In this document: positions 1 to 38,656 of the stretch, piece after piece
How positions within the stretch are numbered: the first letter of the stretch is position 1
Layout: every line of letters begins with the position of its first letter
From: Mizuhopecten yessoensis
Lineage: Eukaryota
Assembly: GCF_002113885.1 (NCBI RefSeq)
Contig: NW_018408752.1
Coordinates: forward strand, 413,624 to 477,623
Reading direction: 5' to 3'
Length of the DNA stretch: 64,000 nt
Notes under the pieces: model-generated
Told to the model about the DNA's origin: nothing
Databases searched by the model: none
Seen by the model: only the letters and a program-made list of their open reading frames with translations
Program-made: the position numbers and the translations under genes

Positions 1-580
1 TTCGTTCAGAATGTCTACTTGATCAGAAATTAAAGTGCCATTTTCTTTTACTATTCTTGGTATAATTTTGGATGTAAAATTTCTGTTTTCTAAATTAAAA
101 AAATAATTAGTTGGTTTTTCTCCTTCTTCTATCCATTTTGCTTTAGACCTGATTATGCTTCCTTTTAGTTTATGGAGTCGAATACTTTCTAGTTCTCTTT
201 TCTTCCTTTCTAACATTTCCCAATCTATTCTTTCTGAATCTTCAATATTCTTTATCTCATCTTTAAGATTATTTTCTCGAATGTTTTGTTGTTTTTTCCT
301 GTATGAAGAGTATGATATTGTTTTGCCCCTTATATCCATCAAAAGTGTCTCTAAAAACAGCTGTTCATTAATGATAAATTGGATATCTGTATCAGGAATG
401 AGATTAATGCTATCAATTTGGTACACTGGAATAGCATATTGCACTTTAATTTCCTCTAAAGACTTTTTGACAAGATCTAAGTATTCAAATTCCTGTAGTA
501 AAGAGTTATTGAACTTCCAAAGGCCCTTTCCTTTTTTGAAATCATTAAATTTTAGAGAAATAGTTGGTATCGAATGATCC
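1..580 (-). mobile_element. L1/Tx1-clade non-LTR retrotransposon ORF2 fragment (end of endonuclease plus linker), running off the left edge
   Basis: Minus-strand translation reads DHSIPTISLKF..KGKGLWKFNNSLL..RGKTISYS..IRSKAKWIEEGEKPTNYFFNLE..DQVDILNE, the typical L1/Tx1 EN-RT linker. Similarity stops abruptly near 580 (5' truncation). Confidence 0.88.
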
Positions 581-2447: not shown

Positions 2448-3116
2448 ATGGCGTCTGATCATATCCAAGGATGGCTCAACAACTGGGAGGATAACTGTAC
2501 CCCATGGCAGATGACAGGTGTCCACGAGGGGTTGGAGCGGTACTACAAGATGTTGACTAATAAGTCTTCCGTCCAAAATAAAATATTCATTCCGCTATGC
2601 GGGAAGTCTGTGGACATAAAATGGCTGGCCGACCGCGGGATTGAGGTCGTAGGCGTGGAAGCCTCAGAAAAGGGTTTGAAGGAATTCTTCACGGAACAAA
2701 ATATTGAATATTCCAAAGAAACCGCATCTTCTGTGAAAGGAACACTGTTCCGGTCACATGACAATAAAATCCGACTTTACTGTTGTGATATATTTGATTT
2801 CTCTGCCAAGGTTGAGTCGGGCTTTAGTGGGGTGTGGGATAGAGGTTCAATGGAAGCTATTGGACCTGGTGACAGGAAAAAATACGTGGACCTAATGAGA
2901 ACTCTTATTGGTCCAGAGACAGGTTATTTGACAGAGATCGTTGAACGTGATCTCGGTAAAGGACCGCCGTTTTGTATTCCGATAGATGAACTCGAGGCCG
3001 TTTTTGGGCCCGGATGTAAAGTTACGAAATTGATGACTGTTACGAACCTCCCAGAATATGCGTTCGGTATTCCCGATTTAATTGATTTCAACGTTTTCTC
3101 TATTTCGTCCAAATAA
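2448..3116 (+). CDS. TPMT: Thiopurine S-methyltransferase-like SAM-dependent methyltransferase, single coding exon (222 aa)
   Basis: Motifs IFIPLCGKSVDIKWLADRG.EVVGVE, YCCDIFDF, VWDRGS and GPPF. ATG at 2448 follows a splice acceptor (..tacactag, 2423). AATAAA overlaps the stop codon. Confidence 0.9.
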   Translation: MASDHIQGWLNNWEDNCTPWQMTGVHEGLERYYKMLTNKSSVQNKIFIPLCGKSVDIKWLADRGIEVVGVEASEKGLKEFFTEQNIEYSKETASSVKGTLFRSHDNKIRLYCCDIFDFSAKVESGFSGVWDRGSMEAIGPGDRKKYVDLMRTLIGPETGYLTEIVERDLGKGPPFCIPIDELEAVFGPGCKVTKLMTVTNLPEYAFGIPDLIDFNVFSISSK

Positions 3117-3420
3117 AATATCCTCTATTTCTTAATCTCATTAACATGGATAATTTGGTTTTAAAAACATAGTTCAGTATGTCATTATACAGTCATTTAA
3201 TGCGAGGGAGCCCGGATGTAAGTTTTTTCTTGTTTTCCTTGGACAGTAGTTTATATCAATCGTTTCATCATAGCAAAATAAAAATATATTTTCAAGAAGT
3301 ATCCGTTTTCTGTTATGAATATACTGACATCAATAATAGCACTGAAAATTATCATTGTCGTCATTGTTTATTACATATATATAAGGGAAACATTATAACT
3401 TGCTTCCCCTCTATCAATAA

Positions 3421-4301
3421 TGTTCATGGAAACATAACTAGGGGAGGGTCTTGGCGTAATAACCACCGACACAGGATTCTCTCTTCATAGATGTGTTTAA
3501 TGATGGACACGAGAATATAGACAAAAGTCCCTACAACAATAAATAGCTATATTCAATACACAGTACCGAAACTAACGCGCCCAACTATACAACAATAGCG
3601 CGTACTTTAAAATAACTCGAATAATACATTTACATAGATTCGATCACATATGTGTTGATTCTATTATCGTTTATCCACAGTTAAACCTATAAGAATATAT
3701 ATAACTGACAAAGTACCAATAGACCACAGGAAATATCACGACGAACATTATCTACCAATAAGTTACAATTATCAGTAAAATTACCGATCGCATCTTAATG
3801 TAATGATAACAAATAAATAAATAATAATGTTAAACTTACTTGGCATGTGGTGCCCAGGACGTGAATAAATAAATATAGATTAGATCTACATATGTGTAAT
3901 ATATTTATCGATCAGATATAAAAAATCATAAAAAGATTACCTTATTTTCACTGAATCCAGAACAAACATAAAATGAGGCTACCTAGCGTGGAAACGGGAA
4001 ACGAACGACCTCGATCTCCTAGCTATAACTGGAGACGGGTGTGAATACCAAACACGAGAAAGATCACGAGAACATTCACCTATAACCACGGAGCGTCAAG
4101 ATGTATTTTGAGGATATAATGTCAGTGTAGAGAAACAACTGTCAAAAACCATTACACATAATTGTATATCAGTAGTCACCAACAGAAAATATAACACAGA
4201 CATGACCGCCAACAAACAAAACCAGTATACAAATAGAAGGACGAAAGTCGATTTGTCGAGTCATGGATATTGAAAAGTTTGCATGGTATCAAGTTGTAAC
4301 A
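3421..4301 (-). mobile_element. Possible solo LTR
   Basis: Minus strand begins TGTTAC and ends TGAACA, with ATTAAA and a U5-like tract near the 3' end and internal GTAAGT donors. No matching TSD found. Confidence 0.3.
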
Positions 4302-4489
4302 CTATAGTACCTTGCTTTCCGTTGTTTTCATGTTGCGTTCCATGGAACTGAGGAGAAGAAATGTTTGCTTAAAGGATTTCAGGCTGGCGAAAACGGGGAA
4401 TATCACCATACCCTTATAGCTCCAAAGTAACTAAAACAATAGTAGATCCAAGTTCATCAGAGCAGAGTTATGCCCAGTATGGGTTGAAC

Positions 4490-4640
4490 TAGGGGAGTGG
4501 TGTATACGTAGCGGAACTGGACTGTGTCGGTCTCTGGCTCATCTGGTTAAAGCGTTCGTCTAGAGTTCGTAGGTTCCGGTTAGAGTTCTGGTTTGGCCGT
4601 GGGATTTATTTCCTTTCCTGTTACGTTTGCGCCCACGTAG
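4490..4640 (+). repeat. tRNA-tailed repeat family, degenerate copy followed by PBS-like sequence
   Basis: Shares TAGCGGAACTGGACTG, a tRNA-like body and TTTCC..TCCTGTTAC with the copies at 13628 and 40576. Confidence 0.6.
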
Positions 4641-4689
4641 AAACCCGAAAAAAACCGACGAGAAATATTCAGCCTTGCCATTACCATGT

Positions 4690-5490
4690 ACGGCATTAAA
4701 AACGTTACAGGACTAGATCAAATCCATGGCAGAATATTCAAAGAACACGGAGACACCACTTCATCAACATTTCCAAAAATATTCACAAAAGCACTTGACA
4801 CTGTGAACACTGTATACTACAACGCATCAACCACAGCCCCATATCGCTCACATGGACAGCATGCAACCCCTCAAACACGTTATCACCTGTGCTACCTTAC
4901 ACATTTAGGAGACGGAAAAATACTCTGTGGCTTGCCCTCCACAATTACCTTTAAAACACAACTTCTAACATTTATAAATACAAGACTTTGCCCAAAACAG
5001 CATAACATTCATCATCCTTTTGGACTCTACAAAATTCTTGCAATACAAGCTACGCTACTACGGCATCACGTGAAACACATTCACATGGATCACAGTTGTT
5101 TTAAAACAACGAACCGAAACAGTTGTACATACTTGCCAACTCTTCCTATTTAGGAGGGGGACTCCCGATTTTGGACCCCGGGAACAGGGCTGGCTTATGA
5201 ACCCAGACAAATGCACCATACTCACAATTTCAACAAAATGCTCTCAAAATACCAATAAGTAGTACAAGTAAATACCTTGGACGAACACGACAAAACAACA
5301 TTAAATTGGTCAAAGACATCAACAAGATTATTGTGTAAACAAATGCAAATAAATCACAAAGCTTTCTAAAACACAACCGCAAAGTGCAGAGGCCATTTAA
5401 TAGATAAAAACAATAATACTGCTCTTCAGTCTAGGATCCATAGGCTAATACATAAAAACATAAAAAAAAAGTGCAAAGACAGGCCGGACT
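4690..5490 (+). mobile_element. Highly degraded LINE RT-region remnants
   Basis: Patchy motifs GLDQIHGRIFKE (GPD..I..R.LKE-like) and IFTKALDT; no continuous frame. Confidence 0.35.
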
Positions 5491-5716
5491 AACGACATAA
5501 ACATGTATATTCAATGACCGATCCTTCATATACAAAATAAGAACACGCCGTTCTGATTAATCGGCCTGTTATCCAGTGAATTCGCCCGTGTAATATTTGT
5601 ACATATGTCACCAAGTGTAATATACCCTGGAGCGTTTTTGATTGGATGTGCAAGTCAGAAATCGATTATGACAATGACGTGACGTTATAAATTGTGAATG
5701 GCGCAACAAAATGGCT

Positions 5717-8700
5717 GTTTAGTTTAAACATATTTTATTGCCAAAATAGTGACAACAGGATTGGGCACAAGTTATTACAACATTATTTACGCCCTTTCCC
5801 CAAATATATACATCAGTTTTACAAACATGGCACAACTGGGTATCAAATAATATGTATAATAGTAGCATTACAACACCAGAAACAAAAAGAGAAAGAACAA
5901 CATTAAACAGTCTCACAAATTGAGTATAGAAATATAAAACGCCTTACGAATTAAAACCTACAGCTGGTCTTTATGAATTTTTGCACGTTACGAAAAATAT
6001 AATTATTTTGTTGAGAAGACAGATCCGGAATACCAGATAAAAAATATATCTAAGGAGATTTCATTAACAAAATTTAGATTTTGAAACAATTCAAACCTCT
6101 GGTGTGTATAAACTGGACATTCAAAAAAGAAATGATAGGCGTTTTCACATGGAGATCCACAGACACAGGCGGGACTATCTACGATGTTGGCTCTAAATAA
6201 ATCATAATTTAGGGAACTGCAGTTGTACCTTAATTTAGTGTGCATGATATTTAGTTTTCGTTCACCATAACCAAAATAACTGTGCGTCTTGGTGTCCAAT
6301 TCTCGAGAGATGGCTTTTTTTTAATCTTCCTAAAGTGACCGATGATCTTTTAGCAGTATCTAGATTGTTCCAAGAGCGAAGCGTAGAAGGTTAGAAGGAT
6401 GAATCTGTACTAGAAAATCTGAAATTTGGTATTACAAAGTCATTACTGTTTCTTAAAGGATATCTGACATTTTGGTTTACTGTATTGGGTAGAATTTTGT
6501 TTAAGAATTCAGGGGTGATACCATTTTTCATTTTGTACAATAAATGCAGTTTCCTTCTTTTTCTCCTGTTTGAGAGTCTTGCTAACCCCGATTCAAAATA
6601 GAGAGCATAATTATTAGCATAGGAAGGAAGACCAGTAATGATACGTGCGGCTTCACGTTGACATTTTTCTAACCTCTGACTTTCATTAATTGTACATCCG
6701 TCCCATAATTCACAACAGTAATCAAAAATTGGCAAAATAAGAGAGTTATATATTTAAAACAAAGTTTCTCTTTTAAGAATATGTTTCAGACTTCTAAGAA
6801 CATTTATTTTCTTCATAACGGAGGTATAAATAGCTAAAATATTATCCCCCCAATTACCTGCAGAATTGAAGACTACACCCAAATGTCTGTGTTGATCACT
6901 AAAATTCAATAATTAGTCGTTAAAACGTAATTCTAAATCTCCATTTAGTTCTATCGCATTAGAGATAAATAAAACATTGGTCTTGCTAGCATTGAAATCT
7001 ACTAAAAAAAAATGGCCCATTTACTTAAAGAATCAATGTCTAGGTTAAGGACAGTCTATTTCTTGACAGGAAGAAGATATGTGTAAGAGAGAAGTATCGT
7101 CTGCGAAATGTCCAGAGGCAGAAAGCAATACATCAGATATGTCATTAATATATACTAAGAATAATAATGGGCCTAAAATAGAACCTTGAGGAACTCCTGC
7201 TTTTATGAAACCAGCACGAGAAAGAAAATTCGATATAAAAACGTGTTGTTGATCCAATTCAATAGCTCGCCAGTTATCCCATAAGACTTTAATTTAATAA
7301 TGAGCCCTTTATGCCATACACGATCAAAGGCCTTAGAGATATCGCAGAAAACTAATCTGACATTTTTTTTGTCTTCTAAAGCTAGACAGATATTGTGATA
7401 GATTTCAATGAGTTGATATAAGGTCGAATGATTCGGCATAAAAGCGGACTGGTGTTGATGAAAGAAGGAGATTTCCAAAAAATAGTTATGGATATGTTTA
7501 AAAACAACCCTTTCAAAAACGTTCCCAACAGTAGATAACAAAGATATAGGTCGGTAATTTGAAGGAAGATGTCTGTTCCCCTTCTTGAACAAAGGCATTA
7601 CTTTCGCAAGTGTCCAGGCTTGTGGATATATACCACGAGAAAGAGACATGTTTTAAAAGATAATCATTAACGGATAACATACAGTACTGGCAGTTGCTTT
7701 TAACATATGGTTACTAATACCATCGAGACCAGAGGCTTTACCTAGTTTGAAGAATGTCTCATATTTCTTCAGAATTCGTACGTATAGAGATTATAATCTT
7801 GTCAGTCCTGTTCTGAACTTAAGGAATATCTGCTGATGAATCATCAAGACTAGTAATGGAACAAAAAAATCATTTAACATATTTGCTTTCTCCTTGCCAT
7901 TTGTAAAAAATTCATTTGATACAGGATCTTGAAGGGTTGGAACAGACTGGGATGAGCCTGAACACTTCATAAGTCTTTTAATAGGTCTCCAGTAAAATTT
8001 TGGATCTGAAGTTGAAAATTGGTCGATGAGACAATGGACATTTTCATAGAACTCTAGACGAGCATGTTTCTTAATGTTATTACAGTCGAACCTCGTTATC
8101 TCGAACTCGTATAACTCGAAGACCCCGTTTATCGGTCCCGGCCAAAACTCTTCTTAATCTTAGTAATAAAAACTCTGATAATTCGAACTCTGAAAATTCA
8201 AAAAACTCGGATATCCCGAAGTGAAATATCGGTCCCAACAACGTAAATCCTACATAAAAATGTCGCATAACTCGAATACTCGGATAACTCGAAGTTTCCA
8301 ACGATCCCGTCGACTTCGAGATAACGAGGTTCGACTGTAACTTTATTGCACTGAGACTTAAATTTGTTAATATCAGAAGGGTTTCCACGGGATCTATATA
8401 ATTTGTGCAATCTATCCCTAATCCTTATCTGTTTTCTAAGTTCAAATGACATCCAGGGTTTGTCGTTTGGCCAACTGTCACTTCTTTGGAAGGTATAAAT
8501 TCTGCGGCAAATTCTAAAAAATTCAATGTAAAAAGGTCACAGGCTTCGTCGACAGTATCACAGTTTGCAAAATTATTTTCCCAATCGAAATCTAAAATCT
8601 TATTATTAAAGTTACCAAAGTCGGCAGATTTATAAAGCCAGACTTTTCTCGTATACACTGTTTTAATAGCAAAACATATATTGATTGAAGCAATACATGC

Positions 8701-9814
8701 CTCATGATCACTGATCGAATCATCTACTGTAATAATAACATTACTTTCAACACAAGTCAAAGTTTCAGATATGAAGATGGGGTCCAGGAGACTAGCTCTG
8801 GTAGGACAGATACGAGTAGGTTCATTAATTAAACTTATCATTCCGTATGTATTGATGAAGTAGTTAACAAATCCACGTGAAGATCACCCGTGATTATCAA
8901 ATTGGGAGAAATAACTAGAGCACTGTCTATAGATTCACGTAAATTGTTCCAAAAGGGCTGGACAGAATTTTCGGGCCTATAAATGGTACATAGAATTAAA
9001 CATTAACCTGGGAAATCAACTTGAGTTCAAAAGACTTCGTCTCCTCTGTATTTAAGGTCACGTAGACGCTTGACTTTTAACATGACATTAAAATAAACAG
9101 GAATCCCACCCCCGGTGAAAGTTCTATATCTAAGCGAAATGGTTCGTGGGAATCGTTAATACGTACAAATTCAGAAGCAACATGCTCGTCTAGATGTGTT
9201 TCGGTGAGACAAATAATGTCATACTCGCCTGCTCTATCTTCGATGGCCTCAATTTTATTCCTAACACTTCTAACATTCAGATGGAAAAGAGATCATTCAT
9301 GTGGGCCTTGGTTTGATTCAATGTCCATATGTGATAATAAAAGAAGAATTAAAATAATAATAAATTCAATGTTGAGAAAACTAGAGTTCAGAAACCGGAC
9401 TACACCTAAAACTGTATTAGAAATTATGTTCCCTGAATACAGTAATTGACTAAAAATGTGACCTAAATGAACACTAAACAAGATAAATTCTGATTCCATC
9501 CAACATCTGCCATATACTCTAGTGTAGAGGCCTCCGATGGCCACTCTATACGACATTATATCATTAACCATTATCTATGGGATTTTTTTTATATAATCGA
9601 ATCGGCAAACCGAAGACTTCCACACTAACAAAAAGTAAAGACCAGCTATAGTGAAAATTTGTTTGACTGAAACACGAAGAAAGAACATTGAAAGAAGAGA
9701 CTAAAAAGAACATAAAAATCAGAACAGACAATAGCTTTAGAACAAATGTTCCTCTCAGAGCGATCATAAATATCGCAGTAATAGCGTTCGTTTGATCGAC
9801 TGACGGATTTAAGT
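5717..9814 (-). mobile_element. Full-length decayed CR1-type (Zenon-like, no recognisable ORF1) LINE with APE endonuclease and RT
   Basis: Frameshifted ORF pieces: EN (LINEPTR..LLDPIF..ISDH), RT ([45 protein letters not shown]) and C-terminal CVCG..E..HFFFECP. 3' tail AATAAAATATGTTTAAACTAAAC. TSD ATGGCT at 5711-5716 and 9815-9820. Confidence 0.92.
8083..8337. mobile_element. Tc1/mariner-pogo-type MITE nested in the LINE
   Basis: 23-bp perfect TIR CAGTCGAACCTCGTTATCTCGAA with TA on both sides. Removing it restores the LINE frame (SQCNKVNNIKKHA). Confidence 0.93.
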
Positions 9815-26972: not shown

Positions 26973-29900
26973 TTATTCTTTGCTTGCATTCTGTGCGAAG
27001 TTCACAGAATATCCACCAGTGTTCGGGTCCTGGTTGAGCTTGAAATTTTCCGTGGACAAGCCAAAGGGTTTAAGGATCATGTTTCCGAGGTCCTTTAGTT
27101 TACCTGTAAGTGAGAACACAAATTGGGTACACTGTGGTACTGTTACTGAAGTCACTGGTATACGTGCCTCCACTAGGAATCAGACTGTCAACTACAGATA
27201 ACAAGTTTAGTCCGGTGCTGTAACAATAGAATGATTGTAACGAGGGAATTCAGTCATGACCGGTAACAAGAGACTAGACTGAACATTCTATCATACACAA
27301 TACTGAGCTGTGTATATGGGTGTAAATATAACCAAGGTGTCAATGTATATGAGGAGTCAAACCCAAGACATCATATTACTAGTCCATAACCCTTCTGACT
27401 TTACCTTTTAGAGAGAATTTCCCCCTAGCCAATCACCGTTTTAATTAGGCAAGCATACAAATTGTGACTTTTTTATATATGATGTCATTGACCTTTATAA
27501 ATATCTTTTTTACAAGAGATAATTTGCATATTTTATTTCAAACAGTTACAGACACACTGATCGAGTTACCAATTTTAGTACTTACCCAACATTTCTTCTT
27601 TCATTTTCTCATTTCTTTCCTTTATTTGATCTGGTAGCCTCTGATAAATAAAACAAAATTACAACATAATTTTCAATTTGAATATCTACTTGCATTTCTC
27701 AGACAAGGAAATAATTCAACTTGAAATAAAAACATCAAGCAAACAAAAACTGACTTTGTTGATTCCTGATTTCCAGCTAGAGAATTACATTAGTTGGGAA
27801 TAAATGACAGTCATATAAAACTACTTTCAAATGTTCCATGATTTGCCAATGTTAAAATTAAATTGAAGTTTCTAATTGTTTGTGGTCTCTGAAGTATTAA
27901 TATGAAAGTTGTTTTATGGAAACAAATATTTGAGTTCTGAAATTCCTGTGGGGCTACTTAAATTGAGCCCATGATATTTTTTAAAATGATGTTCATGACT
28001 TGCCTGAATGCTTATAAAATCATATACTTTCTAAGCAACTACACATTGTCCTTTAGTATGCTTTTTACAAAAGTGATAGAAAGAATGAACTCTTAATAAT
28101 CAGAGATTATACTTTATTCACTAAACAGGTGGTACTAGATCTAGAGCCTTTAGTGTGGTACAGCCTATATTGTCATGACAGAAAGGGTGGTAACAGTGGT
28201 ATATTACAATACAGGTTACAGTGGTATCTTATACTACAGGTTTTACTGTAATTGATAAGAGAGATGGTCTTGTAATACAAGGTATACATGTATTGACAGG
28301 AAAGGTGGTACCTGTATCTTTATACAAAGTGCATAGTGGCCAAAGGGGTTGTCTTGGTATAGAGGTTAGACTATAGCAAAAGATAGCTTGTATGGTTAGA
28401 CTAGGGACATAACATATGGGTGTGGATTACATGTTATACAGTAGTGACAGTAGTCGTTGTTATTAGGTTATTCTACATGGACAACAGTTATCAACAATTA
28501 CGGGGCAATATTGGGTCTTTGTTCCAAAACAGCTCAAAGAAAGTCCTGTCCCTCCACACAGCTTTTACAGCATTCACAGAACCGCAAGTAGTGGAGAAAA
28601 AAATAACTGCTTATCGTGTCTCTCTATTGATTTGGTCCACTTACCATACAGGCGGCTCTAGCGGAGTGTTGACTAGGGTCGAGTTCCAGAACTTTCTGGT
28701 AGTCAACAAGAGCCTCATCTAGTTTATCTTCACCTTCGTACAGTTCAGCCCGCCTCAACAGGGCCTTCAGGTAGTGTGGGTGGAGATTTAGGGCATGCGT
28801 GCAATCCTTTATAGCATCCTCCTTGTGGTCCTTATAATAAAAATACCCAGGGTAAATTTGCATTTTGTCACAGATATCGCTTACTAATATAGAAAACATT
28901 TTCCTGGGATCATGGTTAAAATATTAAATGCAATTTGTCAACAAATATTGAGGCAGTCATTTACCAATATATGTCTCGTTATATAATTAAGTATGGAAGG
29001 CAACAGCATAGTTATCCTACTAACATGCATGAAACAAAGTCAGAACACTTAGTTTAAACATATTTTATTGATCAAAGATACAAAGGGATTGGACGATAAG
29101 TTATTTCAAGTCTGAACACTACAATGGGTACACAAGAAGTCATGCCAAGTTTTCTGCCATGATTAATTAATTCTGATGAATAAATTTCAAGAAAGCATGT
29201 CTTACCAGTTTAAGTTTACAGACAGCTCTGTTGGAAAACATGATAGCTCTGTCTTTTGGAAAGCTTAGCGGACATATATGCAGGGCTCTGGTGTAACATC
29301 GTATTGCTTCCTTGAAACTTTGATCCTTAAACAATTTGTTTCCTTCCTCTTTACAGCAACGTGCTTCATTCCTTTTTTCCTGTTGAAATAGTGAAAATAA
29401 TTTAACTTTAGATAATCTTATTAGCAGTGATGGGTTGTTATATATATATCAAACTACACAACATACAATCAGTGGATAATTTACCATGGCTGACAGTGGC
29501 TGTACATTGAAATACAGGAGTATGCACATATAAACTTAATGGCAAATTTGAATCTGTTCAAACTAGAACTGTAAGACAAAGGTTAACTAACACCCCCGCT
29601 CCTATAACTGGAAGCTAATTAAGGCTTACTAAGGCAAAGCATTGCAAAGTAATCCATATAGTCTCCCACCAGTAATGATTTCTTAATTGACGGAGCTATA
29701 CACTTATTTAATCATACAGGTCACTGACATACTTCCTGTACTCCCTCCCAATGCCAAAATGTAGTAGTGTATATTGTATATTGTGAACTTCCGGTATTTT
29801 ATTTTGTACTTCCGGTATTTTCTTTGTATTTCCGGTAAATATTGTGAACGTCCGGTAAACCATGGTACTTCCGGTATAACTTTAACTTCCGGTCGAATGT

Positions 29901-32900
29901 AACTTTCTGTATTTTCGTACTTCCGGTACGCTGTCAACTTCCGGTGACATTTTTGAAAAAAATCCAGTATTATTTAATATCTGTTATCAGCAAACATTTA
30001 TATTTGTATTGAGTTATTGTAGTAGAAAGTAATTGAATTATTTAATTGTATTTTTCAGTTATTCATTTTTTTTGTTCGCTTCAATATATTTCTAGTTTGA
30101 ATTGAATTTTGATTTCACTCAAGATTTATTGAAATGCTTTGATTGAATTTATTTTTTCCTCTCTTCAACTTTGATTATCTTGATTGTTTTCATATTGAGC
30201 TTTCATTTTTGATTTTGTTTAGTACAAATTGACGTTTCTTGGATTTTTCAAAATGTTTTTGTGAAAACAAATTGTGTATTTTTTTTGTTTGTTCTCGTGT
30301 CTTTAAATTAATTTATACGTGGTTGTCGGAAATATACTTTGCTTCAGAGGAGTCACTTGTTATTAATTTGACTTCGTGGTTTTATTTTGGAATTTATTTC
30401 TTTTGAAATTGGCTGGGTTTTTTTACTTAATTTTGGCTTAAGTTGTCTTATAGTGTTAAATTTCTGTTGTCATTGATAATTGATAAATTTACTTAGATTT
30501 TTGTTTTCATTTTTTCTTCTGTTTCGAAAGTTAACATGTAGGATTACTTAAGTAATTTTTTTTTCAAGTGGAATAGTTATTTTGTGGGTACATGCTTGGT
30601 CGCAGTTGATGTTGTTCTTTGTTACACGTGCTATGTGGATCTTTCTGTATTTATGTTGAATGGATGATGGTGCGTTAGATGCTATTTATCGCTAATCGGA
30701 TTGATTTTTTCGTTGACTTATTCGCGTGTATTTTGGCTGAACGCGACCGAATATCATTCTTCTTAGGATTTACATAGTTCTATTTCAGGTAAGTCATTTA
30801 ATTCATTGACGGTAGATGTGGCAGAGTTGGCTGGTTTTATTTGATTTATAAGTGTGTATATCTATGAGAACGAGAGTAAAATACTTGTTCTGTGTTTGGT
30901 GAGAACACATAGATGAACTTTGTTGGTTTGCTTGAATATTTTATTTGTGTTTTGTTGTGTTTATTGTGATACAGGTTTCGCGATGGCCGATTCTGAAGAA
31001 AAACTATCGCAGGCGGAAGCGATACTTCCACAAGAGGAAGCGGACTCTGTAGAGCATGTGTCTAAGTTGTTTTCTCAAATGGGTGCTAGACCTAAAGGTG
31101 ATAGTTTAGTTAAGTTAAGGAGTCAGATGATGGATTTCCTTAATTCAACAGGAGGATTGGACACTGCTAATCCGTCGATGGCTGGACAAGGGGTAAGTGG
31201 AAATGTTGTTTCTCAGGGTATTGGTTCTACCACAGGCACTCTGGACACGAGATTCTACAAGTTACCGTTATTTTCTGGAGATCAAGGAAAGGGTGAGGCT
31301 ACTTTCGATTTATGGAAATACGAAGTGCAATGTCTGATTGACACAGGTAAGTCACAGGATGTCATTGGGCAGTCTATCCGAAGATCTCTGAAGGGAACTG
31401 CAGCCAGAGTAGCCATGCGGTTAGGAGCTAATGCGACACCCGCACAGTTGATCGCCAAACTTAGAAGTCTGTATGGTATAGTAGATGACCAGGAGACTCT
31501 GTTGGAGAATTTCTATGCCGCACATCAGCAACCCAAGGAAAATGTGACTGAGTGGGCTTGTAGACTGGAAGACTTGTTGCTTAGAGCCGATTCTGGTATA
31601 GGACCTGCGGAACGCAATAAGCGGTTGCACAACAAGTTTTGGTCTGGTCTGAGGCAAGACTTAAGAGATGTTACTGGCCACAAGCATGACTCCATTGCTG
31701 ATTATGAAGAACTATGCATAGCAGTAAGATCTATAGAAAGGACAAGAGACAACGAGAAACCATCGAAGGCGACTGTTACTGTCAACTCAGCTGTTGAAGG
31801 GGAGGAGAAGGAGGATTTGAGGTCTGTGGTCAACCAATTGTCTGCTGCTATTCAGAGGTTAGAGAAGCAGATATCCGATGGTGGGACAACCTCGTGGAAG
31901 AACAACAGAGATCACAGGAACAGGAATAGAGGAAACTCTAACAACTACGGAGGAGGGTCTGTTTACCACTCTAAGCCGTCGCAAGAGAAGACTGACCAGG
32001 ATGACGCGTCTTGGGACAGGAAACCTGATATTATATGCTGGAGGTGCAGACAGCCGGGACATATCAGAGCGCGATGCAGGGTAAATATGGATCACTCGCG
32101 CAGTTCGGTAAAAGGGAAGGAGTCTATGAAGACGGACCACTCATAGATTTCCGAATTCAAGGTCCGAACAAGAGTACTAAGGCTACTAGGACAGGAACAC
32201 AAATGGTTGGCAATGCTAATGAAGTTGATGTCAACGTAGAAGGTAAGGGGACCAGGGCGTTACTTGATACAGGTGCGACCGTGTCTACGGTTAGCCAACA
32301 TTTTTATGAATGTCATCTGAGTCATTTGGACCTGCAGCCACTGGATGAAATTCTTTCTATAGAATGTGCTGATGGTCAACAGTTACCTTACTCCGGATTT
32401 ATCGAAGCGGGAGTCAGTTTTGAAGGACTATTTGGAAGAGATGAGCAGAGGTGTCTTTTGCTGGTAGTCCCCAACAGCAACTATAACTCCAAGGTACCAG
32501 TGTTGTTTGGAACCAACGTTCTGTCGGTATTGTTGGAAGGGTGTCGAAGCAGGAATGGACCGAAGTTCTTGCAGAAGGGATTGGATACTCCATGGTTTTT
32601 AGCATTTCGCTGTATGACATTGAGGGATCGGGATTTGGTGAGAAATCGCAACAGCATTGGCCTCGTCAAGAATGCAGGAAACATGGATTGCGTCCTTAGA
32701 CCGAACTCTACTATCACCCTGAAGGGATATGTAGACCAGCGGAGCGCCTATCCAACTACCTGTGCTATCATGCAGCCCACGGAACGATCCAAGCTGTCCA
32801 AAGATATTGATGTTACACCTACAGTGTTTTCATATGACTGCGACAGTACACATCCATTGGACGTTCAACTATCCAATCTGACAACACATACGTTTATCAT

Positions 32901-35900
32901 TCCTCCCAAGGCAATTTTATGTGAGATACAGCCAGTGATTGTCCAGGAACTTCCTACTGTTGATGGAGAGGTGGGAATACCGAAGTCATTTATGGATAAG
33001 ATAGACTTTACCAATTCAGCTGTTACGGAGGAGGAACTACAGCTAGGAACGAAACTCATAAAGGGATACGAGGATATATTTTCACACGGAGATACTGACC
33101 TCGGGTGTACTAATCTCGTGAAACATCGAATCGATTTGACGGATCCAGTTGCTTTTAAACAACGCCATAGGAGGATACCACCTTCTATGTATGACGAAGT
33201 GAAGACTCATCTTCAGCAACTTTTGTCTGCGGGAGTCATCAAACCATCATACAGTCCCTGGTCATCGAACATTGTTCTGGTGAGGAAGAAAGATGGATCA
33301 TTGAGGATGTGTGTGGATTTCCGACAGCTAAATCAACGCACCATTCGGGATGCATACGCGTTACCACGAGTAGAGGACATCCTGGATTGTTTAGCTGGAT
33401 CACACTACTTTACTGTGCTGGATTTAAAGTCGGGTTATCATCAGGTTGAGCTAGAGGAAGAACATAAGGAGCGAACTGCATTTACCGTCGGCCCACTGGG
33501 GTTTTATGAGTTCACGAGGATGCCTTTTGGACTTACGAACGCTCCTGCGACATTTCAGCGCCTGATGGAGAGATGCATGGGAGACCTACACTTAGCTATC
33601 TGCCTGATATATCTTGATGATTTAATCATCTTTTCGCGAACGTATGAGGAGCATCTGGAACGACTAGGAAAGGTTTTTCAGAGACTCAGAGACAACGGTT
33701 TGAAGCTTGCGCCTAAGAAATGCCAGTTCTTTATGAACAGAGTTGCCTATGTTGGACACATCGTCACACCGGAAGGCATTGAGGCAGATCCCAAGAAGAT
33801 TGAGAAGGTACGAGACTGGCCGACACCGTCTAATCCTGAAGAACTACGTCAATTCCTAGGTTTTGCTGGTTACTACAGGAAGTTTGTAAAGGATTTTTCA
33901 AAGATTGCGAGACCTTTAACTGACCTGTTACCACCGACCAGAGTAAAGAAGAACAAAGGAAGGGCAAAGACTAAGATAAATGGCGTTAAGTGGACATGGG
34001 CATCGGAGCATGATACAGCGTTCAACGGCCTGAAGGAAGCGTTATGCAATCCTCCTGTGCTTGGATATGCTAACTACAGTCAGCCGTTTGAGCTTCACAC
34101 CGATGCAAGTACCTTAGGACTAGGAGCCGTTCTATATCAAGAGCAAGATGGACAGTTACGACCTATTTGCTACGCCAGTCGAGGATTGAGCAAGTCGGAG
34201 AGGAATTACCCGGCTCATAAACTGGAATTCCTGGCGTTAAAATGGGCAGTTACCGAAAAGTTCCATGACCATCTATATGGACAGACGTTCACCGTTTTAA
34301 CGGACAACAACCCGCTGACCTACGTTTTGTCGAAAGCAAAGCTTGACGCGACGGGGCATAGGTGGTTGTCCGCTCTAGCGGCATACAACTTCGATATTAA
34401 GTATCGACCAGGACGGAACAACGCGGACGCAGACGCTTTGTCACGGCTTCCGGGATGTAACATATCATCAGAATCTGTCCAAGCCGTCTGTAAAGGAGCA
34501 ACGTTTTGTAAAGGTTCATTGGTGGAAAGCTTGAGCCTATCAACAGAGGTATTGGATATGCTTGACGTTGATGACGAACATGGTTTCCAAACCATGACAC
34601 CCCACCAGTGGCGAACTCTTCAGACGGAGGACGATGTTATAGGGGAATGGCTACCCATCATTAGGAGGAATCTGAAGCCAACACGGAAGAGGTTTTCAGC
34701 TATACCAGAAAACGCAACCCTTAACAGATGCTGGGATAGCTGGAAACTGAAACGTGGTGTGCTATATAGACGGGTATCTGATGGTGAGACCGATGTGGAC
34801 CAACTTGTACTTCCGGTTGCCATGCGAGAGAAGGTCCTGACGTCATTACACAATGACATTGGCCATCCTGGAAGGGATAGGACGTTATCTCTGCTGAGAG
34901 ATAGATTCTTTTGGCCTGGTATGACCAAAGATGTGGAAACGTGGTTGAAGGAATGCCAGAGATGTCTACTCAGGAAATCGTCGACTAGCATTAGGGCTCC
35001 GTTAGTCAACATTGTTACCACCCAACCTATGGAGTTGGTATGCATGGACTTCTTGAAACTAGAGGCGTCTAAAGGGGGGTTTCAAGATGTTTTAGTAATC
35101 ACCGACCATTTTACGAGGTATGCCAAAGCCATTCCAACTCGGAGTCAGTCGGCTAAAGCAACAGCGGAGGCTTTGCAGGGATTTATTGAACATTACGGAA
35201 TTCCGCGGAGATTACATTCCGACCAAGGAGCTAACTTCGAGGGGAAAGTAATAGAAAGTTTGTGCGAAACATTTCATATTACTAAATCGAGAACGACACC
35301 ATACCATCCTAGCGGAAATGGAATGTGCGAACGTTTCAACAGAACCCTGATCGACATGTTAGGCACATTGGAACCGCATCAAAAGAAAGACTGGAAGAGC
35401 TTTGTGGGTTCGCTCACATATGCGTACAACTGTACACGGCATAAGACAACGGGTTATTCGCCATTTCAGCTGATGTTTGGACGACAGCCACGATTGCCCG
35501 TTGATCTATTGTGTGGAGTAAACGAGGAAATTACCCCAACTAGCATGCCGGATTATGTCAAAAACATGAGGAACCGGATGTCACATTCGTTCAGCTTAGC
35601 GAGTAAGAAGGCTCGGGAATCGCAGAGTCGTCAGAAGGCAGGCTACGATCTACGTAGTAGAGAAGCCGTTTTGGAACCGGGTGACCGCGTTCTTGTTAAG
35701 GTACTTGCCTTTGAGGGACGTCACAAGCTAGCGGATCGCTGGGAGCCTGACGTATACATCGTACAGAGTCAACCCAACATTGACATTCCGGTATACACCA
35801 TACTTCGAGAGAGTGGTGAAGGAAAGAGTAGAACTCTTCACAGAAACCATCTACTTCCAATTGGAACTATACCGGTGGAAGTGGATACGGTACCCATTGC

Positions 35901-38656
35901 ACATCCACCTCGGCCGGTACCTCGTGTTAGGAGGTCGAGGATGGATAGTGGTCCGCATCATCGGAAGTCTGTGGCTGAGCCTGTTGTATCACCGCCTGTA
36001 AGTGACAGCAACGAGAGCTCGGATGAGGAATTTGTGGGTATGAACGTTCCTACTAACGTTCAACGGCCTCCCACACAGGACAAGGTGCAGCCGAGCAAGG
36101 ACATGACACCCGTACCTGGACCTCAGATCGACTTCAGTGATGAGGAGACATCGGAATCGGAACCGGAGGATGAACCTGCAGCTGCAGTACAGGGGAATAC
36201 TACTTCGCCTGATCCGGAGATTCCAATACCCCGACGATCGACAAGGAACAAACGACCGCCTAATTGGATGACATCAGGCGAGTTTGTTTGTTCACAACAA
36301 CCTGCTGGAGCGGAATGGAAGATGAAAGCCATGTTTCTGATGGACATAACATCTACAGCATCCTTCGGAGATATGCCAGCATCAGCCCAACAGGCATTGT
36401 TAAATATTTTAACTGGTTGAGTATGTGTGCCATTTTACGTAACGTTATTTGAACGTTAATATGCATTTGTATATGTAGTATGTATGTGTAAATGGAAACC
36501 CCATGGAAGATGAGGACATCTTTCATTTAAGCGGGGGAATACCTGATGAATTGGGGAGTTAATATATATTTTTTTGTTTTTTCCTCAGTTGCAGATTTTA
36601 TATTTGAATTGTGTGTAAATATTTTGCATGGACTTTTGTTATATTGTTTTATGTTTTATTTACATTATTTCCTGATCATGTAGATGAGGACATCTTCCAT
36701 CTAAGGAGGGGATAATGTAGTAGTGTCATTATTTGTCATTATTACTTTTAATATATTTGTGGTATTTAGCTATACGCGTTCGTATGTAACGGAAATCAGC
36801 CTTCCGTGTAATTTTGTACGTCACGCATTGCGGCAAAACTTTTAGCGCGCGCGCGGAAATAGCACGCGTAAATGCGAGTAAGGTACTGAGCGGATGTGAT
36901 GTAATGTGTTGTAAACCTGTTTGTCCAGTACGTATTGTCTATGTATAGAATACCTAGTATTGAATGTAGGGTAATTTACCTGGTGCACTGGTCACTTTGA
37001 ACAGAGCGGCCAGAGCGAGCACAGCGAACATTTGTACACCTATATCTTTACCTAGCCAGCATAGGAATTAAAAGAGGTAGCGGGCACTAGAGCCAAAAGC
37101 AAATAATGTAAGTACTCGCGTATAAATATAAGTTTAATTCATTATAGTATCTATTCAATAATATATTTAATTAACGTAATATTTTTGTTAAAAGTAAAGT
37201 TAATATTTTGAAAGTCTTTGTAAATTTAGAAATCGGGCGTGGTCAATTTAGTAGACAAGTGATTTCGAAGAAGCAAGTTTTTAATATATATTGTTTCCTT
37301 TTATAGCTTACATTGAACGAGTAAGACTGAGGACTCGGCGGACTTTGTCCGAGAAAACCCTCTTCACATTGAAGAGGTGGGTATTTTAATATATTTGTAA
37401 TTATGCTGTATTTCTATATAATATATAGATTGAATGTAACAGTTGTAATACGTATTCCATTATTGTAACTTATGTAACTCACTAGGCTACGGCCAGGTAG
37501 TTGTTTGACATGTCTTAGCTTATGTGATTGTATAAATGTTATATGTGTAGTAATATGATGTATTTCATGTTACAGGGTTTTTACTTACGTAATAAATTAA
37601 CTGAGAAAAGAACCCAGGAGTTGTCGTATATCCACGATAAAAGACGACTATTACAAAAACATACTTACATACCAAATCTTGTTAGCCCAGATCAGGGATG
37701 TGTAGTGGACCACTACACATCCCTGCCCAGATGCATCAGTTTTGCTGAAATTGTCCGACTACTACTAGTAAAGGAAGAGATGTCAGGACAAAGATTTTTA
37801 ATAAAGGGCAATAACTCCTTAAAAAGGGTAGAAATGAAAAAATACTAGCCTGATGCACGACATCAGGGGGTAATTACCATATCTGTAGTTTATGAGACAG
37901 ACAAAGATTTATTCAGCGAAGGGCCATAACTCCTTTTAAAAGGGTCCGAATGAAAAAGTATTACTTGGATGCACAACGTCGGGGGATGTATGCGATTCCA
38001 AGTTCAATTACCTCCTTTTCTTCTTCCGTCATTTTTTCTTCTAATTGTTTTAATTCATCTTCATTCGCCTCGCCTTCTTCCGCTGATTCATAGTTGTCAT
38101 CTTCTTCTGTTTCACTGTCAGAATCTTCATTTTCAAGAAGCTCCTCCAAGTTCACTCCTGCATTGGATTTGTTACCTTTGTCTTTAGAAAGTTCTTCGCA
38201 AAAGTCAAACTCGTTCACATCCGCACAGTTTGGTTCATCTGTTTCTTTCTTCACTTGTGAGTCTGACGTTTGACTAGTCACATCAAAAGATCCATTCGTG
38301 TTGATATCAGAGAAGTTAGCAGTTATGTCATCCATATCACTGCTATCTGTTACCTGGATTCCACGTTTTTCTATATCGTCATTGTCTTCCACCTGTACAC
38401 ATTTTCTATCCGTTCGGGAATGTCGCAGATCTACGTACCTTCCCTCTGTTTCCTTCTCACCTGTATTTTGCGGTGTCGCGATATTCGGCATATTATAACC
38501 ATCTGTTTCTTGAATTCCAGAACACATAACCGTATCGAAAGAATCGTGAAACTGTTCCTCCGTTTTGACGCCAGAAAAAGATGATTCATCACTGACATCA
38601 GACTCCCTTTCCACTTGTCGCACCACTGTGCCGACTTCCTCGACTGGGTTCGACAT
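26973..38656 (-). CDS. TTC1: Tetratricopeptide repeat protein 1; exons 38656-38012, 29379-29206, 28830-28645, 27640-27586, 27103-26973 (396 aa)
   Basis: Acidic N-terminus, three TPRs ([44 protein letters not shown]) and the TTC1 C-terminus [39 protein letters not shown]. All introns GT-AG and in phase. Confidence 0.95.
29787..29945. promoter_or_regulatory. Array of ETS-type motifs (ACTTCCGGT) at the Gypsy left terminus
   Basis: 6 exact and 3 variant copies spaced 17-21 bp apart. Confidence 0.65.
30983..32146 (+). CDS. gag: Gag, PNMA-like capsid with CCHC zinc knuckle
   Basis: [48 protein letters not shown] and [17 protein letters not shown] at 30983 follows an acceptor at 30974. Confidence 0.92.
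   Translation: MADSEEKLSQAEAILPQEEADSVEHVSKLFSQMGARPKGDSLVKLRSQMMDFLNSTGGLDTANPSMAGQGVSGNVVSQGIGSTTGTLDTRFYKLPLFSGDQGKGEATFDLWKYEVQCLIDTGKSQDVIGQSIRRSLKGTAARVAMRLGANATPAQLIAKLRSLYGIVDDQETLLENFYAAHQQPKENVTEWACRLEDLLLRADSGIGPAERNKRLHNKFWSGLRQDLRDVTGHKHDSIADYEELCIAVRSIERTRDNEKPSKATVTVNSAVEGEEKEDLRSVVNQLSAAIQRLEKQISDGGTTSWKNNRDHRNRNRGNSNNYGGGSVYHSKPSQEKTDQDDASWDRKPDIICWRCRQPGHIRARCRVNMDHSRSSVKGKESMKTDHS
32035..36420 (+). CDS. pol: Pol polyprotein (protease, RT, RNase H, integrase), in the -1 frame relative to gag
   Basis: LLDTGA protease, LDLKSGYHQ and YLDD RT, LHTDAS RNase H, HHCC and [16 protein letters not shown] integrase, GPY/F-like tail. No stops in 1461 codons. Confidence 0.97.
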   Translation: MLEVQTAGTYQSAMQGKYGSLAQFGKREGVYEDGPLIDFRIQGPNKSTKATRTGTQMVGNANEVDVNVEGKGTRALLDTGATVSTVSQHFYECHLSHLDLQPLDEILSIECADGQQLPYSGFIEAGVSFEGLFGRDEQRCLLLVVPNSNYNSKVPVLFGTNVLSVLLEGCRSRNGPKFLQKGLDTPWFLAFRCMTLRDRDLVRNRNSIGLVKNAGNMDCVLRPNSTITLKGYVDQRSAYPTTCAIMQPTERSKLSKDIDVTPTVFSYDCDSTHPLDVQLSNLTTHTFIIPPKAILCEIQPVIVQELPTVDGEVGIPKSFMDKIDFTNSAVTEEELQLGTKLIKGYEDIFSHGDTDLGCTNLVKHRIDLTDPVAFKQRHRRIPPSMYDEVKTHLQQLLSAGVIKPSYSPWSSNIVLVRKKDGSLRMCVDFRQLNQRTIRDAYALPRVEDILDCLAGSHYFTVLDLKSGYHQVELEEEHKERTAFTVGPLGFYEFTRMPFGLTNAPATFQRLMERCMGDLHLAICLIYLDDLIIFSRTYEEHLERLGKVFQRLRDNGLKLAPKKCQFFMNRVAYVGHIVTPEGIEADPKKIEKVRDWPTPSNPEELRQFLGFAGYYRKFVKDFSKIARPLTDLLPPTRVKKNKGRAKTKINGVKWTWASEHDTAFNGLKEALCNPPVLGYANYSQPFELHTDASTLGLGAVLYQEQDGQLRPICYASRGLSKSERNYPAHKLEFLALKWAVTEKFHDHLYGQTFTVLTDNNPLTYVLSKAKLDATGHRWLSALAAYNFDIKYRPGRNNADADALSRLPGCNISSESVQAVCKGATFCKGSLVESLSLSTEVLDMLDVDDEHGFQTMTPHQWRTLQTEDDVIGEWLPIIRRNLKPTRKRFSAIPENATLNRCWDSWKLKRGVLYRRVSDGETDVDQLVLPVAMREKVLTSLHNDIGHPGRDRTLSLLRDRFFWPGMTKDVETWLKECQRCLLRKSSTSIRAPLVNIVTTQPMELVCMDFLKLEASKGGFQDVLVITDHFTRYAKAIPTRSQSAKATAEALQGFIEHYGIPRRLHSDQGANFEGKVIESLCETFHITKSRTTPYHPSGNGMCERFNRTLIDMLGTLEPHQKKDWKSFVGSLTYAYNCTRHKTTGYSPFQLMFGRQPRLPVDLLCGVNEEITPTSMPDYVKNMRNRMSHSFSLASKKARESQSRQKAGYDLRSREAVLEPGDRVLVKVLAFEGRHKLADRWEPDVYIVQSQPNIDIPVYTILRESGEGKSRTLHRNHLLPIGTIPVEVDTVPIAHPPRPVPRVRRSRMDSGPHHRKSVAEPVVSPPVSDSNESSDEEFVGMNVPTNVQRPPTQDKVQPSKDMTPVPGPQIDFSDEETSESEPEDEPAAAVQGNTTSPDPEIPIPRRSTRNKRPPNWMTSGEFVCSQQPAGAEWKMKAMFLMDITSTASFGDMPASAQQALLNILTG
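32107..32166 (+). promoter_or_regulatory. Putative -1 ribosomal frameshift signal (G GTA AAA plus H-type pseudoknot)
   Basis: 5-nt spacer; stem 1 32119-32129/32141-32151; loop CGGACC pairs with GGTCCG at 32161-32166. Confidence 0.7.
36716..37655 (+). repeat. 3' LTR of the Gypsy element (940 bp, with no partner LTR)
   Basis: Starts TGTAGTAGT directly after the PPT, has AATAAA at 37591, and ends ACTATTACA. Confidence 0.85.

What the first reader, a model, noticed from the sequence alone, without database searches (positions are those of the whole stretch)
29756..37659. Intact Gypsy element with integrase-type ends and TSD but no LTR pair and no PBS
Seen: gag and pol are uninterrupted, suggesting a young copy. 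The outer ends are TGTAGTAGT..ACTATTACA with AAAA on each side, and the flanks look like two halves of one host repeat. The left terminus shares only 11 bp (TGTAGTAGTGT) with the post-PPT LTR at 36716, then becomes an unrelated ETS-motif array and T-rich leader. I find no U5 end followed by a TGG-initiated PBS anywhere in 29760-30983. Established: canonical LTR reverse transcription produces identical LTRs and needs a primer site. Inference: either a Gypsy lineage with asymmetric termini and non-canonical priming, or a one-off chimera, deletion or misassembly. The AAAA TSD is low-complexity, so it is weak evidence alone.
Basis: partly seen in the sequence, partly recalled or inferred. Interest (0 to 1): 0.85.

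Follow-up and report, generated by a model that had tools for sequence, protein, structure and literature searches.

The report
Gypsy copy with deleted left LTR
This is an ordinary Gypsy-type retrotransposon copy that lost most of its left repeat and its primer site in one 1.45-kb deletion; sister copies in the same genome have two normal repeats and a tRNA-Lys primer site, so no new way of copying is needed.

Summary
The element at 29760-37655 has open gag and pol frames and a 940-bp right LTR. Only 11 nt of that LTR remain at the left end. There is no PBS, and AAAA flanks both ends inside a split host repeat.

The lineage idea (asymmetric ends, non-canonical priming) is refuted. At least four sister copies in this genome are 99.2-99.7% identical to this one. 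Each carries, upstream of the point matching window 29778, a 5' LTR (full in three, lacking its first 255 nt in one). After it come one T, a 13-nt PBS that exactly matches the 3' end of the host tRNA-Lys(UUU), and about 520 nt more leader.

So this copy lacks LTR nt 12-935, the PBS and about 520 nt of leader, about 1.45 kb in all. A 7-nt duplicated filler sits at a junction that is unique in the 988-Mb assembly.

The family makes 4-bp target duplications. Three paralogous empty sites show a single AAAA, so the 11-nt stub is the true integrated end.

Whether the deletion happened after integration (favoured) or during reverse transcription is open. A false assembly join is not excluded.

The ETS-like array is normal family leader. 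The intron-less LTR form seen in passing was also noted by the scan on another piece of this genome.

The parts
29560..29755 (.). Left half of the host interspersed repeat that was the insertion target
   Evidence: Query positions 201-400 of the left flank match many paralogues at about 82-85% identity. These are continuous with the right half in the empty paralogues L039-L041.
29756..29759 (.). Left copy of the 4-bp target site duplication AAAA
   Evidence: Empty paralogues have one AAAA where this locus has two. Left- and right-flank matches overlap by 4 bp in C2300, C1046, C4108 and C5376. The family makes 4-bp TSDs elsewhere.
29760..29770 (+). Stub of the 5' LTR: its first 11 nt, the integrated U3 terminus
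   Evidence: Identical to nt 1-11 of the 3' LTR at 36716 and of every sister LTR. It lies directly next to the TSD.
29771..29777 (+). 7-nt filler ATATTGT at the deletion junction, a duplicate of the next 7 nt
   Evidence: Not present in any sister copy. Homology to the others starts at 29778. The 25-nt junction word is unique in the genome at up to 2 mismatches.
29778..30982 (+). Remaining 3' part of the family's long 5' leader (T-rich)
   Evidence: 98.8% identical to C76735, C4488 and C1686, and 85-89% identical to leader variants. In complete copies it is preceded by about 520 nt of leader, the PBS and the 5' LTR.
29787..29945 (+). Array of same-strand ETS-like sites (ACTTCCGGT, the reverse complement of ACCGGAAGT)
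   Evidence: Six exact sites here against 0.31 expected per window. There are 7 TTCCGG cores here, 9-10 in complete copies and 5-8 in diverged leader variants, all in one orientation.
30983..32146 (+). gag (387 aa from the ATG), with a PNMA-like capsid region and a CCHC knuckle
   Evidence: Open frame. PF14893 at E=1.3e-7. A CX2CX4HX4C motif can be read at 32038-32079.
32035..36420 (+). pol in the -1 frame relative to gag: protease, RT, RNase H, integrase, and a 326-aa tail with no known domain
   Evidence: Pfam RVT_1, RT_RNaseH_2, Integrase_H2C2 and rve. About 60-69% identity to unnamed metagenome and mollusc Ty3/Gypsy pol proteins. The tail gives no Pfam hit.
36703..36712 (+). Polypurine tract AAGGAGGGGA, 3 nt before the 3' LTR
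   Evidence: Read directly. The same context precedes every 3' LTR of the family.
36716..37655 (+). Complete 3' LTR (940 bp, TGT...ACA). It holds two 199-nt GT-AG introns (37108-37306, 37377-37575) and an AATAAA at 37591
   Evidence: 46 LTR matches among 130 candidates, of which 40 were scored. The ends are shared by all copies. The introns are precisely absent from other LTR copies.
37656..37659 (.). Right copy of the 4-bp target site duplication AAAA
37660..37985 (.). Right half of the host repeat. It carries a private 33-nt perfect palindrome at 37693-37725
   Evidence: Right-flank matches to paralogues cover query 1-37 and 70-330. The palindrome is missing from the paralogues.

Best explanation
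The locus holds one copy of an ordinary Ty3/Gypsy family. Complete members are about 9.3 kb. In order they have a 935-940-bp LTR (TGT..ACA), one T, a 13-nt PBS for host tRNA-Lys(UUU), a leader of about 1.7 kb with an ETS-like site array, gag, pol in the -1 frame, a PPT and a second LTR, flanked by a 4-bp TSD.

This copy integrated normally into a host repeat at AAAA. It then lacks a single block of about 1.45 kb: 5' LTR nt 12-935, the spacer, the PBS and the first ~520 nt of leader. What is left is the 11-nt U3 tip joined through a 7-nt duplicated filler to the leader.

Shown: the canonical architecture of the sister copies, the exact breakpoints, the uniqueness of the junction and the reality of the TSD.

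Inferred: the deletion was made after integration by error-prone break repair (end joining or replicative repair with a templated insert). I put that timing at about 60%. About 27% goes to a strand-transfer or template-switch error during reverse transcription before integration.

Without U3/R, U5 and the PBS, the copy cannot serve as a template for canonical replication, whatever the state of its reading frames.
For: - Sister copies C76735, C1686, C5411 and C4488 align to the window from 29778 to the 3' end at 99.2-99.7% identity. Upstream of that point they carry about 520 nt of leader, the PBS and a 5' LTR.
- The PBS TGGCGCCCACGTA equals the last 13 nt (with CCA) of a host tRNA-Lys(UUU) gene found at about 13 loci.
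- The 5' and 3' LTRs within C5411 and within C1686 are 98.4% and 98.6% identical.
- 4-bp TSDs occur at seven other insertions: TATA x2, TTAC, AAAG and TTAA x3. Two more are TAAA and TTAG.
- Three empty paralogues of the host repeat show a single AAAA exactly at the insertion point (4-bp coordinate overlaps).
- The junction word is unique in 988 Mb.
- Other copies carry independent deletions with 0-6 nt of microhomology or short fillers. C1523 and C1021 also lost the distal 5' LTR and the PBS, at different breakpoints.
- All six private substitutions and two of the three private small indels of this copy lie within 73-607 nt of the junction. The chance of all six substitutions falling there is about 2e-7. 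This fits mutagenic repair synthesis.
Against: - No reads were available, so the join itself is not independently verified.
- The right breakpoint lies in a 61-bp tandem array and the left one 11 nt into a high-copy LTR. Short-read assemblies tend to break at such places.
- The timing cannot be decided from sequence. A cDNA keeping an 11-nt U3 tip could in principle have been integrated as such.
- Three of the four other young copies (C1686, C76735, C4488) also carry a structural defect. That is easier to explain by errors made during reverse transcription.
- The near-perfect identity of the interiors (100% over 2 kb of gag-pol) may be pooled sequence from gap closing. The 'intact, young' reading of gag/pol is then less certain than it looks.
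Confidence: 0.86

Rival explanations
1. The same deletion derivative, but made before integration. An error at plus-strand transfer, or a template switch during reverse transcription, gave a cDNA whose left end kept only 11 nt of U3. Integrase still joined both ends and made the 4-bp TSD.
For: - The exact U3 tip and a perfect TSD are kept.
- C1021, with TSD TAAA, also keeps both extreme termini while lacking the inner LTR parts plus the PBS or PPT. So does C1523, whose flanks AAAA/ATAA match at 3 of 4 positions.
- Three of the four other young copies are structurally defective, as is usual for products of error-prone reverse transcription.
- A retroviral precedent exists: HTLV-1 proviruses that lost the 5' LTR before integration yet carry the integrase-made short repeat (PMC6950816).
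Against: - It needs several unusual steps in reverse transcription, whereas a chromosomal deletion needs one.
- Other copies lost a terminus outright: C4488 lacks LTR nt 1-255, and C5246 and C3345 are 5'-truncated. Deletions in this family therefore do not respect the ends.
- A templated 7-nt duplicate plus a one-sided cluster of point changes is a typical mark of DNA break repair.
Confidence: 0.27
2. Assembly artefact. The locus really holds a complete element, and 1.45 kb between a contig ending just inside the LTR and a contig starting in the tandem array was lost in a false join or gap closure.
For: - Both breakpoints sit where short-read contigs tend to end.
- Other copies of the family are interrupted by runs of N: L047, L052 and L053.
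- The 7-nt duplicate could be an untrimmed overlap.
Against: - The window has no N.
- The sequence after LTR nt 11 is not LTR, so a word spanning stub and leader must have existed in the data.
- The two sides share no overlap long enough to merge.
- Elsewhere the assembler left N rather than abutting contigs.
Confidence: 0.08
3. A Gypsy lineage with naturally different left and right termini that primes reverse transcription without a tRNA PBS.
For: Only the appearance of this single locus.
Against: - Every other leader-bearing copy that is not itself deleted has the LTR and PBS upstream.
- The junction is unique.
- The 7-nt filler and the missing two array units mark a breakpoint, not a designed terminus.
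Confidence: 0.02

Closest known systems
Deleted or truncated LTR retrotransposon copies made by illegitimate recombination (plants: Devos et al. 2002; rice survey PMC1940013)
   Same: An internal deletion relative to complete family members. Junctions have little or no microhomology, or small fillers. They coexist with solo LTRs and other truncated copies, and TSDs are retained.
   Different: This is an animal genome. The deletion starts only 11 nt inside the element, so the copy mimics an element with one LTR. A cluster of point changes lies next to the junction.
HTLV-1 'type 2' defective proviruses lacking the 5' LTR, some formed before integration (PMC6950816)
   Same: The 5' LTR and adjacent internal sequence are missing, the 3' LTR is intact, and an integrase-type short repeat lies on both sides.
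   Different: There the repeat abuts internal pol/env sequence with no LTR tip. Here the first 11 nt of U3 are kept. This is a retrotransposon, not an infectious retrovirus, and timing could not be established here.
Drosophila gypsy 5' UTR array of Su(Hw) binding sites (own knowledge, not tested here)
   Same: A cluster of repeated, same-orientation transcription-factor-like sites in the leader, downstream of the PBS and upstream of gag. It is conserved across variants of the family.
   Different: The motif is ETS-like (ACCGGAAGT on the opposite strand), not Su(Hw). No binding or insulator or enhancer activity is shown.
Elements with truly non-canonical ends or priming (DIRS/Ngaro with a tyrosine recombinase; self-priming Tf1-like elements)
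   Same: Only the superficial lack of an LTR pair and of a tRNA PBS at this one locus.
   Different: This family has a DDE integrase (rve), paired LTRs, a tRNA-Lys PBS and 4-bp TSDs.

Membership tests
Ty3/Gypsy (Metaviridae) LTR retrotransposon | pol domain order protease - RT - RNase H - integrase | tested here: met
   Pfam: gag-asp_proteas 64-164, RVT_1 416-577, RT_RNaseH_2 655-754, Integrase_H2C2 927-983, rve 996-1092.
Ty3/Gypsy (Metaviridae) LTR retrotransposon | Two direct LTRs with TG..CA ends | tested here: met
   Met for the family: C5411, C1686 and C76735 have both LTRs. In this copy only nt 1-11 of the 5' LTR remain.
Ty3/Gypsy (Metaviridae) LTR retrotransposon | PBS complementary to a host tRNA 3' end next to the 5' LTR | tested here: met
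   Met for the family: 13 nt complementary to tRNA-Lys(UUU)+CCA, 1 nt after the LTR. Absent from this copy.
Ty3/Gypsy (Metaviridae) LTR retrotransposon | Polypurine tract just upstream of the 3' LTR | tested here: met
   AAGGAGGGGA at 36703-36712. The same context occurs in all 3' LTRs.
Ty3/Gypsy (Metaviridae) LTR retrotransposon | Short target site duplication of fixed length | tested here: met
   4 bp at nine other insertions. AAAA here, confirmed by empty paralogous sites.
One-off deletion derivative (illegitimate recombination or repair) | A contiguous block present in sister copies is missing, and the junction is unique to the locus | tested here: met
   About 1.45 kb is missing. The junction word occurs once in the genome.
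One-off deletion derivative (illegitimate recombination or repair) | An undeleted allele exists, or reads span the junction | not testable with these tools
   No reads or second assembly were available. Exact-protein look-ups found no other record.
Lineage with asymmetric termini and non-tRNA priming | The same left end in independent insertions, and no PBS in any copy | tested here: not met

The most novel reading that the evidence does not exclude
The deletion arose during reverse transcription, and the integrase of this family joined a cDNA end carrying only the first 11 nt of U3. Two further copies keep both tips while lacking the inner LTR, PBS or PPT. Together these would mean that strand-transfer errors are a frequent source of integrated, TSD-flanked defective copies in this animal genome, and that an 11-nt tip is enough for concerted integration.
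Probability: 0.27. Interest if true: 0.35.

Novelty: new member of a known kind. Interest (0 to 1): 0.15.

Why it matters
Little on its own. It removes a candidate for 'non-canonical priming' and shows how a deletion that starts a few bases inside an LTR can mimic a one-LTR element. It does fix the full architecture of an uncharacterised Gypsy family in this genome: LTR, a tRNA-Lys(UUU) PBS, a long leader with an ETS-like array, a -1 gag/pol arrangement and a 4-bp TSD. That gives annotators a reference for the other copies. The by-products are more interesting than the assigned finding: introns inside the LTR with an intron-less LTR lineage, and a point-mutation cluster beside the deletion junction.

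Tried and rejected
- Splicing as the cause of the deletion. Neither breakpoint has GT/AG signals, unlike the two true LTR introns.
- A recombination patch as the source of the six private substitutions. None of them is shared with any other leader variant.
- Outer LTRs further away. No long direct repeat exists within 15-52 kb.
- An allelic undeleted haplotig. The unique part of the left flank matches only the window.
- Independent records of gag or pol in other assemblies. None is on record.
- Fetching more intron-less LTR loci.
- Pfam on the 326-aa pol tail and on the PR-RT linker gave nothing.
- A gag/pol slippery heptamer could not be named from the overlap.
- PMC3391691 lacked the statement I sought on the 5' LTR being lost before integration; I took it from PMC6950816.

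Full report
**What is at the locus.** Between 29760 and 37655 lies a Ty3/Gypsy element on the + strand.
- gag runs from the ATG at 30983 to the stop at 32146. pol runs from 32035 to 36420 in the -1 frame. Both are open.
- pol has protease, RT, RNase H, the integrase zinc domain and the integrase core, in Gypsy order. gag has a PNMA-like capsid hit and a readable CCHC knuckle.
- A polypurine tract at 36703-36712 is followed 3 nt later by a 940-bp LTR (36716-37655) that begins TGTAGTAGTGT and ends ACTATTACA.
- At the left end only TGTAGTAGTGT recurs (29760-29770).
- No long direct repeat pairs the two ends, and none exists in 15-52 kb.
- AAAA flanks both ends.

**What the rest of the genome says.** I searched the whole assembly (988 Mb, 82,659 contigs) with the left 1.2 kb. 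This found seven other long copies, and all of them start matching at query base 19, which is window 29778. A search with the LTR gave 46 matches among 130 candidates, of which 40 were scored.

In C76735, C1686 and C5411 a complete LTR lies about 520 nt upstream of the point homologous to 29778. In C4488 the LTR is there but lacks its first 255 nt.

Read directly, the complete copies run as follows: LTR ...ACTATTACA, one T, TGGCGCCCACGTA, then about 510 nt of leader, then the array that begins the window's left part. A pattern search followed by ARAGORN found a host tRNA-Lys(UUU) gene at about 13 loci. Its 3' end plus CCA is the exact complement of those 13 nt.

Within C5411 and C1686 the two LTRs are 98.4% and 98.6% identical. 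The family is thus canonical in LTRs and priming.

**The deletion.** Relative to its closest relatives (99.2-99.7% identity from 29778 onward) the window copy lacks several pieces. These are LTR nt 12-935, the spacer, the PBS and about 520 nt of leader, including the first two units of the ETS-like array. That is about 1.45 kb.

At the junction sit 7 nt (ATATTGT, 29771-29777) that duplicate the next 7 nt. The 25-nt word across the junction occurs once in the genome even with two mismatches allowed. Neither breakpoint has splice signals.

**The ends are real integration ends.**
- Seven other insertions have 4-bp duplications: TATA twice, TTAC, AAAG, and TTAA three times. Two further ones have TAAA and TTAG.
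- The two flanks of the window element belong to one host repeat with roughly a thousand candidate copies.
- In C2300, C1046, C4108 and C5376 the matches to the left and right flank overlap by exactly 4 bp.
- Three fetched paralogues read ...ATGCC[AAAA]CATACTTAC... with a single AAAA.

So no host DNA was lost, the 11-nt stub is the true U3 tip, and the deletion is entirely internal.

**How it most likely arose.** One deletion explains everything. Similar events are common in this family.
- C1523 keeps LTR nt 1-150 joined to the leader about 150 nt after the PBS. It also lacks the end of pol, the PPT and LTR nt 1-215.
- C1021 (TSD TAAA) keeps LTR nt 1-382 joined just after the PBS. It also lacks 3.7 kb up to LTR nt 821.
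- C1686 lacks 746 bp of pol.
- C3345, C5246 and C4488 lost a terminus altogether.
- Junctions show 0-6 nt of microhomology or short fillers. This is the pattern described for illegitimate recombination in plant LTR elements (PMC1940013).

I favour a post-integration break repaired with a templated insert, at about 60%.

A point in its favour, though unexplained in detail, comes from a comparison of five copies.
- The window copy has six private substitutions. All are at + strand T, and all lie at 29850-30384.
- It has two private small indels in the same stretch.
- In the other 7.27 kb it has nothing except one 5-nt LTR indel.
- None of the six substitutions is shared with diverged leader variants.
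- The chance of that clustering is about 2e-7, and of six T positions about 0.01.

A one-sided, strand-coordinated cluster beside a junction fits error-prone repair synthesis.

The alternative is an error in reverse transcription followed by integration of a cDNA with an 11-nt U3 tip, which I put at about 27%. It has a retroviral precedent (PMC6950816). It is helped by the fact that three of the four other young copies carry some structural defect.

**Caveats on the assembly.** Several copies of the family are broken by runs of N, so this is a scaffolded assembly with gap closing.
- Interiors that are 100% identical between copies may be pooled sequence.
- The 'intact gag/pol, hence young' inference, and the absence of private changes away from the junction, are therefore weaker than they look.
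- A false join is possible (about 8%). However, the bases after LTR nt 11 are not LTR, and the two sides share no mergeable overlap.

**The ETS-like array and leader.** ACTTCCGGT is the reverse complement of ACCGGAAGT. It occurs six times at 29787-29945, against 0.31 expected per window. Complete copies have 9-10 TTCCGG cores, and leader variants only 80-84% identical in this stretch keep 5-8, all in one orientation. The array is an ordinary, conserved part of the family's leader, about 470-680 nt after the PBS. It is not a terminus. By position it recalls the Su(Hw) site array in the Drosophila gypsy leader (own knowledge). No function is shown.

**By-products.** The LTR contains two 199-nt GT-AG introns (37108-37306 and 37377-37575).
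- Both are precisely absent from the 3' LTR of C76735, whose 5' LTR keeps them and whose TSD TATA is intact.
- Both are also absent from a solo LTR in C4021 with TSD TTAG.
- The two exon-junction words occur at 7 loci each, against 0 for the controls.
- Thirteen loci match the intron-less form at 79-100% identity.
- Another first-stage note on this genome describes the same thing (s1-517107).

C5411 and C1686 are mosaics, with all their private differences confined to one segment.

**Verdict.** This is a deletion-bearing copy of a canonical Gypsy family, a known kind of object, of low interest in itself. pol is about 60-69% identical to unnamed metagenome and mollusc Gypsy pol proteins, so the host is probably a mollusc. 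I did not verify the species.

Noticed in passing
window 37108-37306 and 37377-37575 (inside the 3' LTR); L027:8748-9289; L051:9034-9588: The LTR holds two 199-nt introns with canonical GT..AG ends. Both are precisely missing from other LTR copies. The exon-junction words occur at 7 loci each (controls 0). Thirteen loci match the intron-less form at 79-100% identity. One is a solo LTR with its own TSD, TTAG. So spliced LTR transcripts were reverse-transcribed, and an intron-less LTR lineage exists.
   Followed up: partly
L027 (G000:C76735:350150-360100), element 346-9289: A sister element with an intact TATA TSD has an intron-containing 5' LTR but an intron-less 3' LTR, and all 4 of its private substitutions lie in that 3' LTR. 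Canonical reverse transcription should give identical LTRs. This suggests gene conversion, cDNA recombination or an intermolecular strand transfer.
   Followed up: partly
window 29850-30384: All six private substitutions of this copy are at + strand T (T>G x2, T>A x3, T>C x1) and lie 73-607 nt from the deletion junction. Two private small indels (30157, 30380) lie in the same stretch. There are no private substitutions in the other 7.27 kb. This is either mutagenic repair synthesis or an artefact of how near-identical repeats were assembled.
   Followed up: partly
L042 (C1523) and L043 (C1021): Two other copies carry independent deletions that remove the distal 5' LTR plus the PBS (LTR 1-150 and LTR 1-382 retained). 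They also carry 3' deletions that remove the PPT plus the proximal 3' LTR. Both extreme tips are kept. C1021 has an intact TSD, TAAA.
   Followed up: partly
L025 (C5411) and L026 (C1686): These are mosaic copies. All 34 private substitutions of C5411 fall in the leader and the first 500 nt of gag. All 35 of C1686 fall in the 3' half, around its 746-bp pol deletion. This looks like recombination between subfamilies. The leader diverges much faster than the coding part between subfamilies: 85-89% against 93-99%.
   Followed up: no
L045 (C5557), around 1768-2004: In this copy an inverted fragment of the LTR (nt 264-501, opposite strand) is joined directly to pol at family position 4146, followed by a normal 3' half and 3' LTR.
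   Followed up: no
window 37686-37732: A perfect 33-nt palindrome (16+1+16, 37693-37725) is flanked by a 7-nt direct repeat, CCCAGAT. It is absent from paralogues of the host repeat. It looks like a minimal TIR-pair remnant or a transposon footprint.
   Followed up: no
window 29560-29759 and 37656-37985; G000:C5376:829260-831119: The target is an abundant host repeat with about 900-1100 candidate copies. In one paralogue its 5' part is amplified into a long 49-bp tandem array.
   Followed up: no
window 35440-36417 (pol residues 1136-1461): pol has a 326-aa tail after the integrase core, and a 250-aa linker between protease and RT. Neither has any Pfam match.
   Followed up: no
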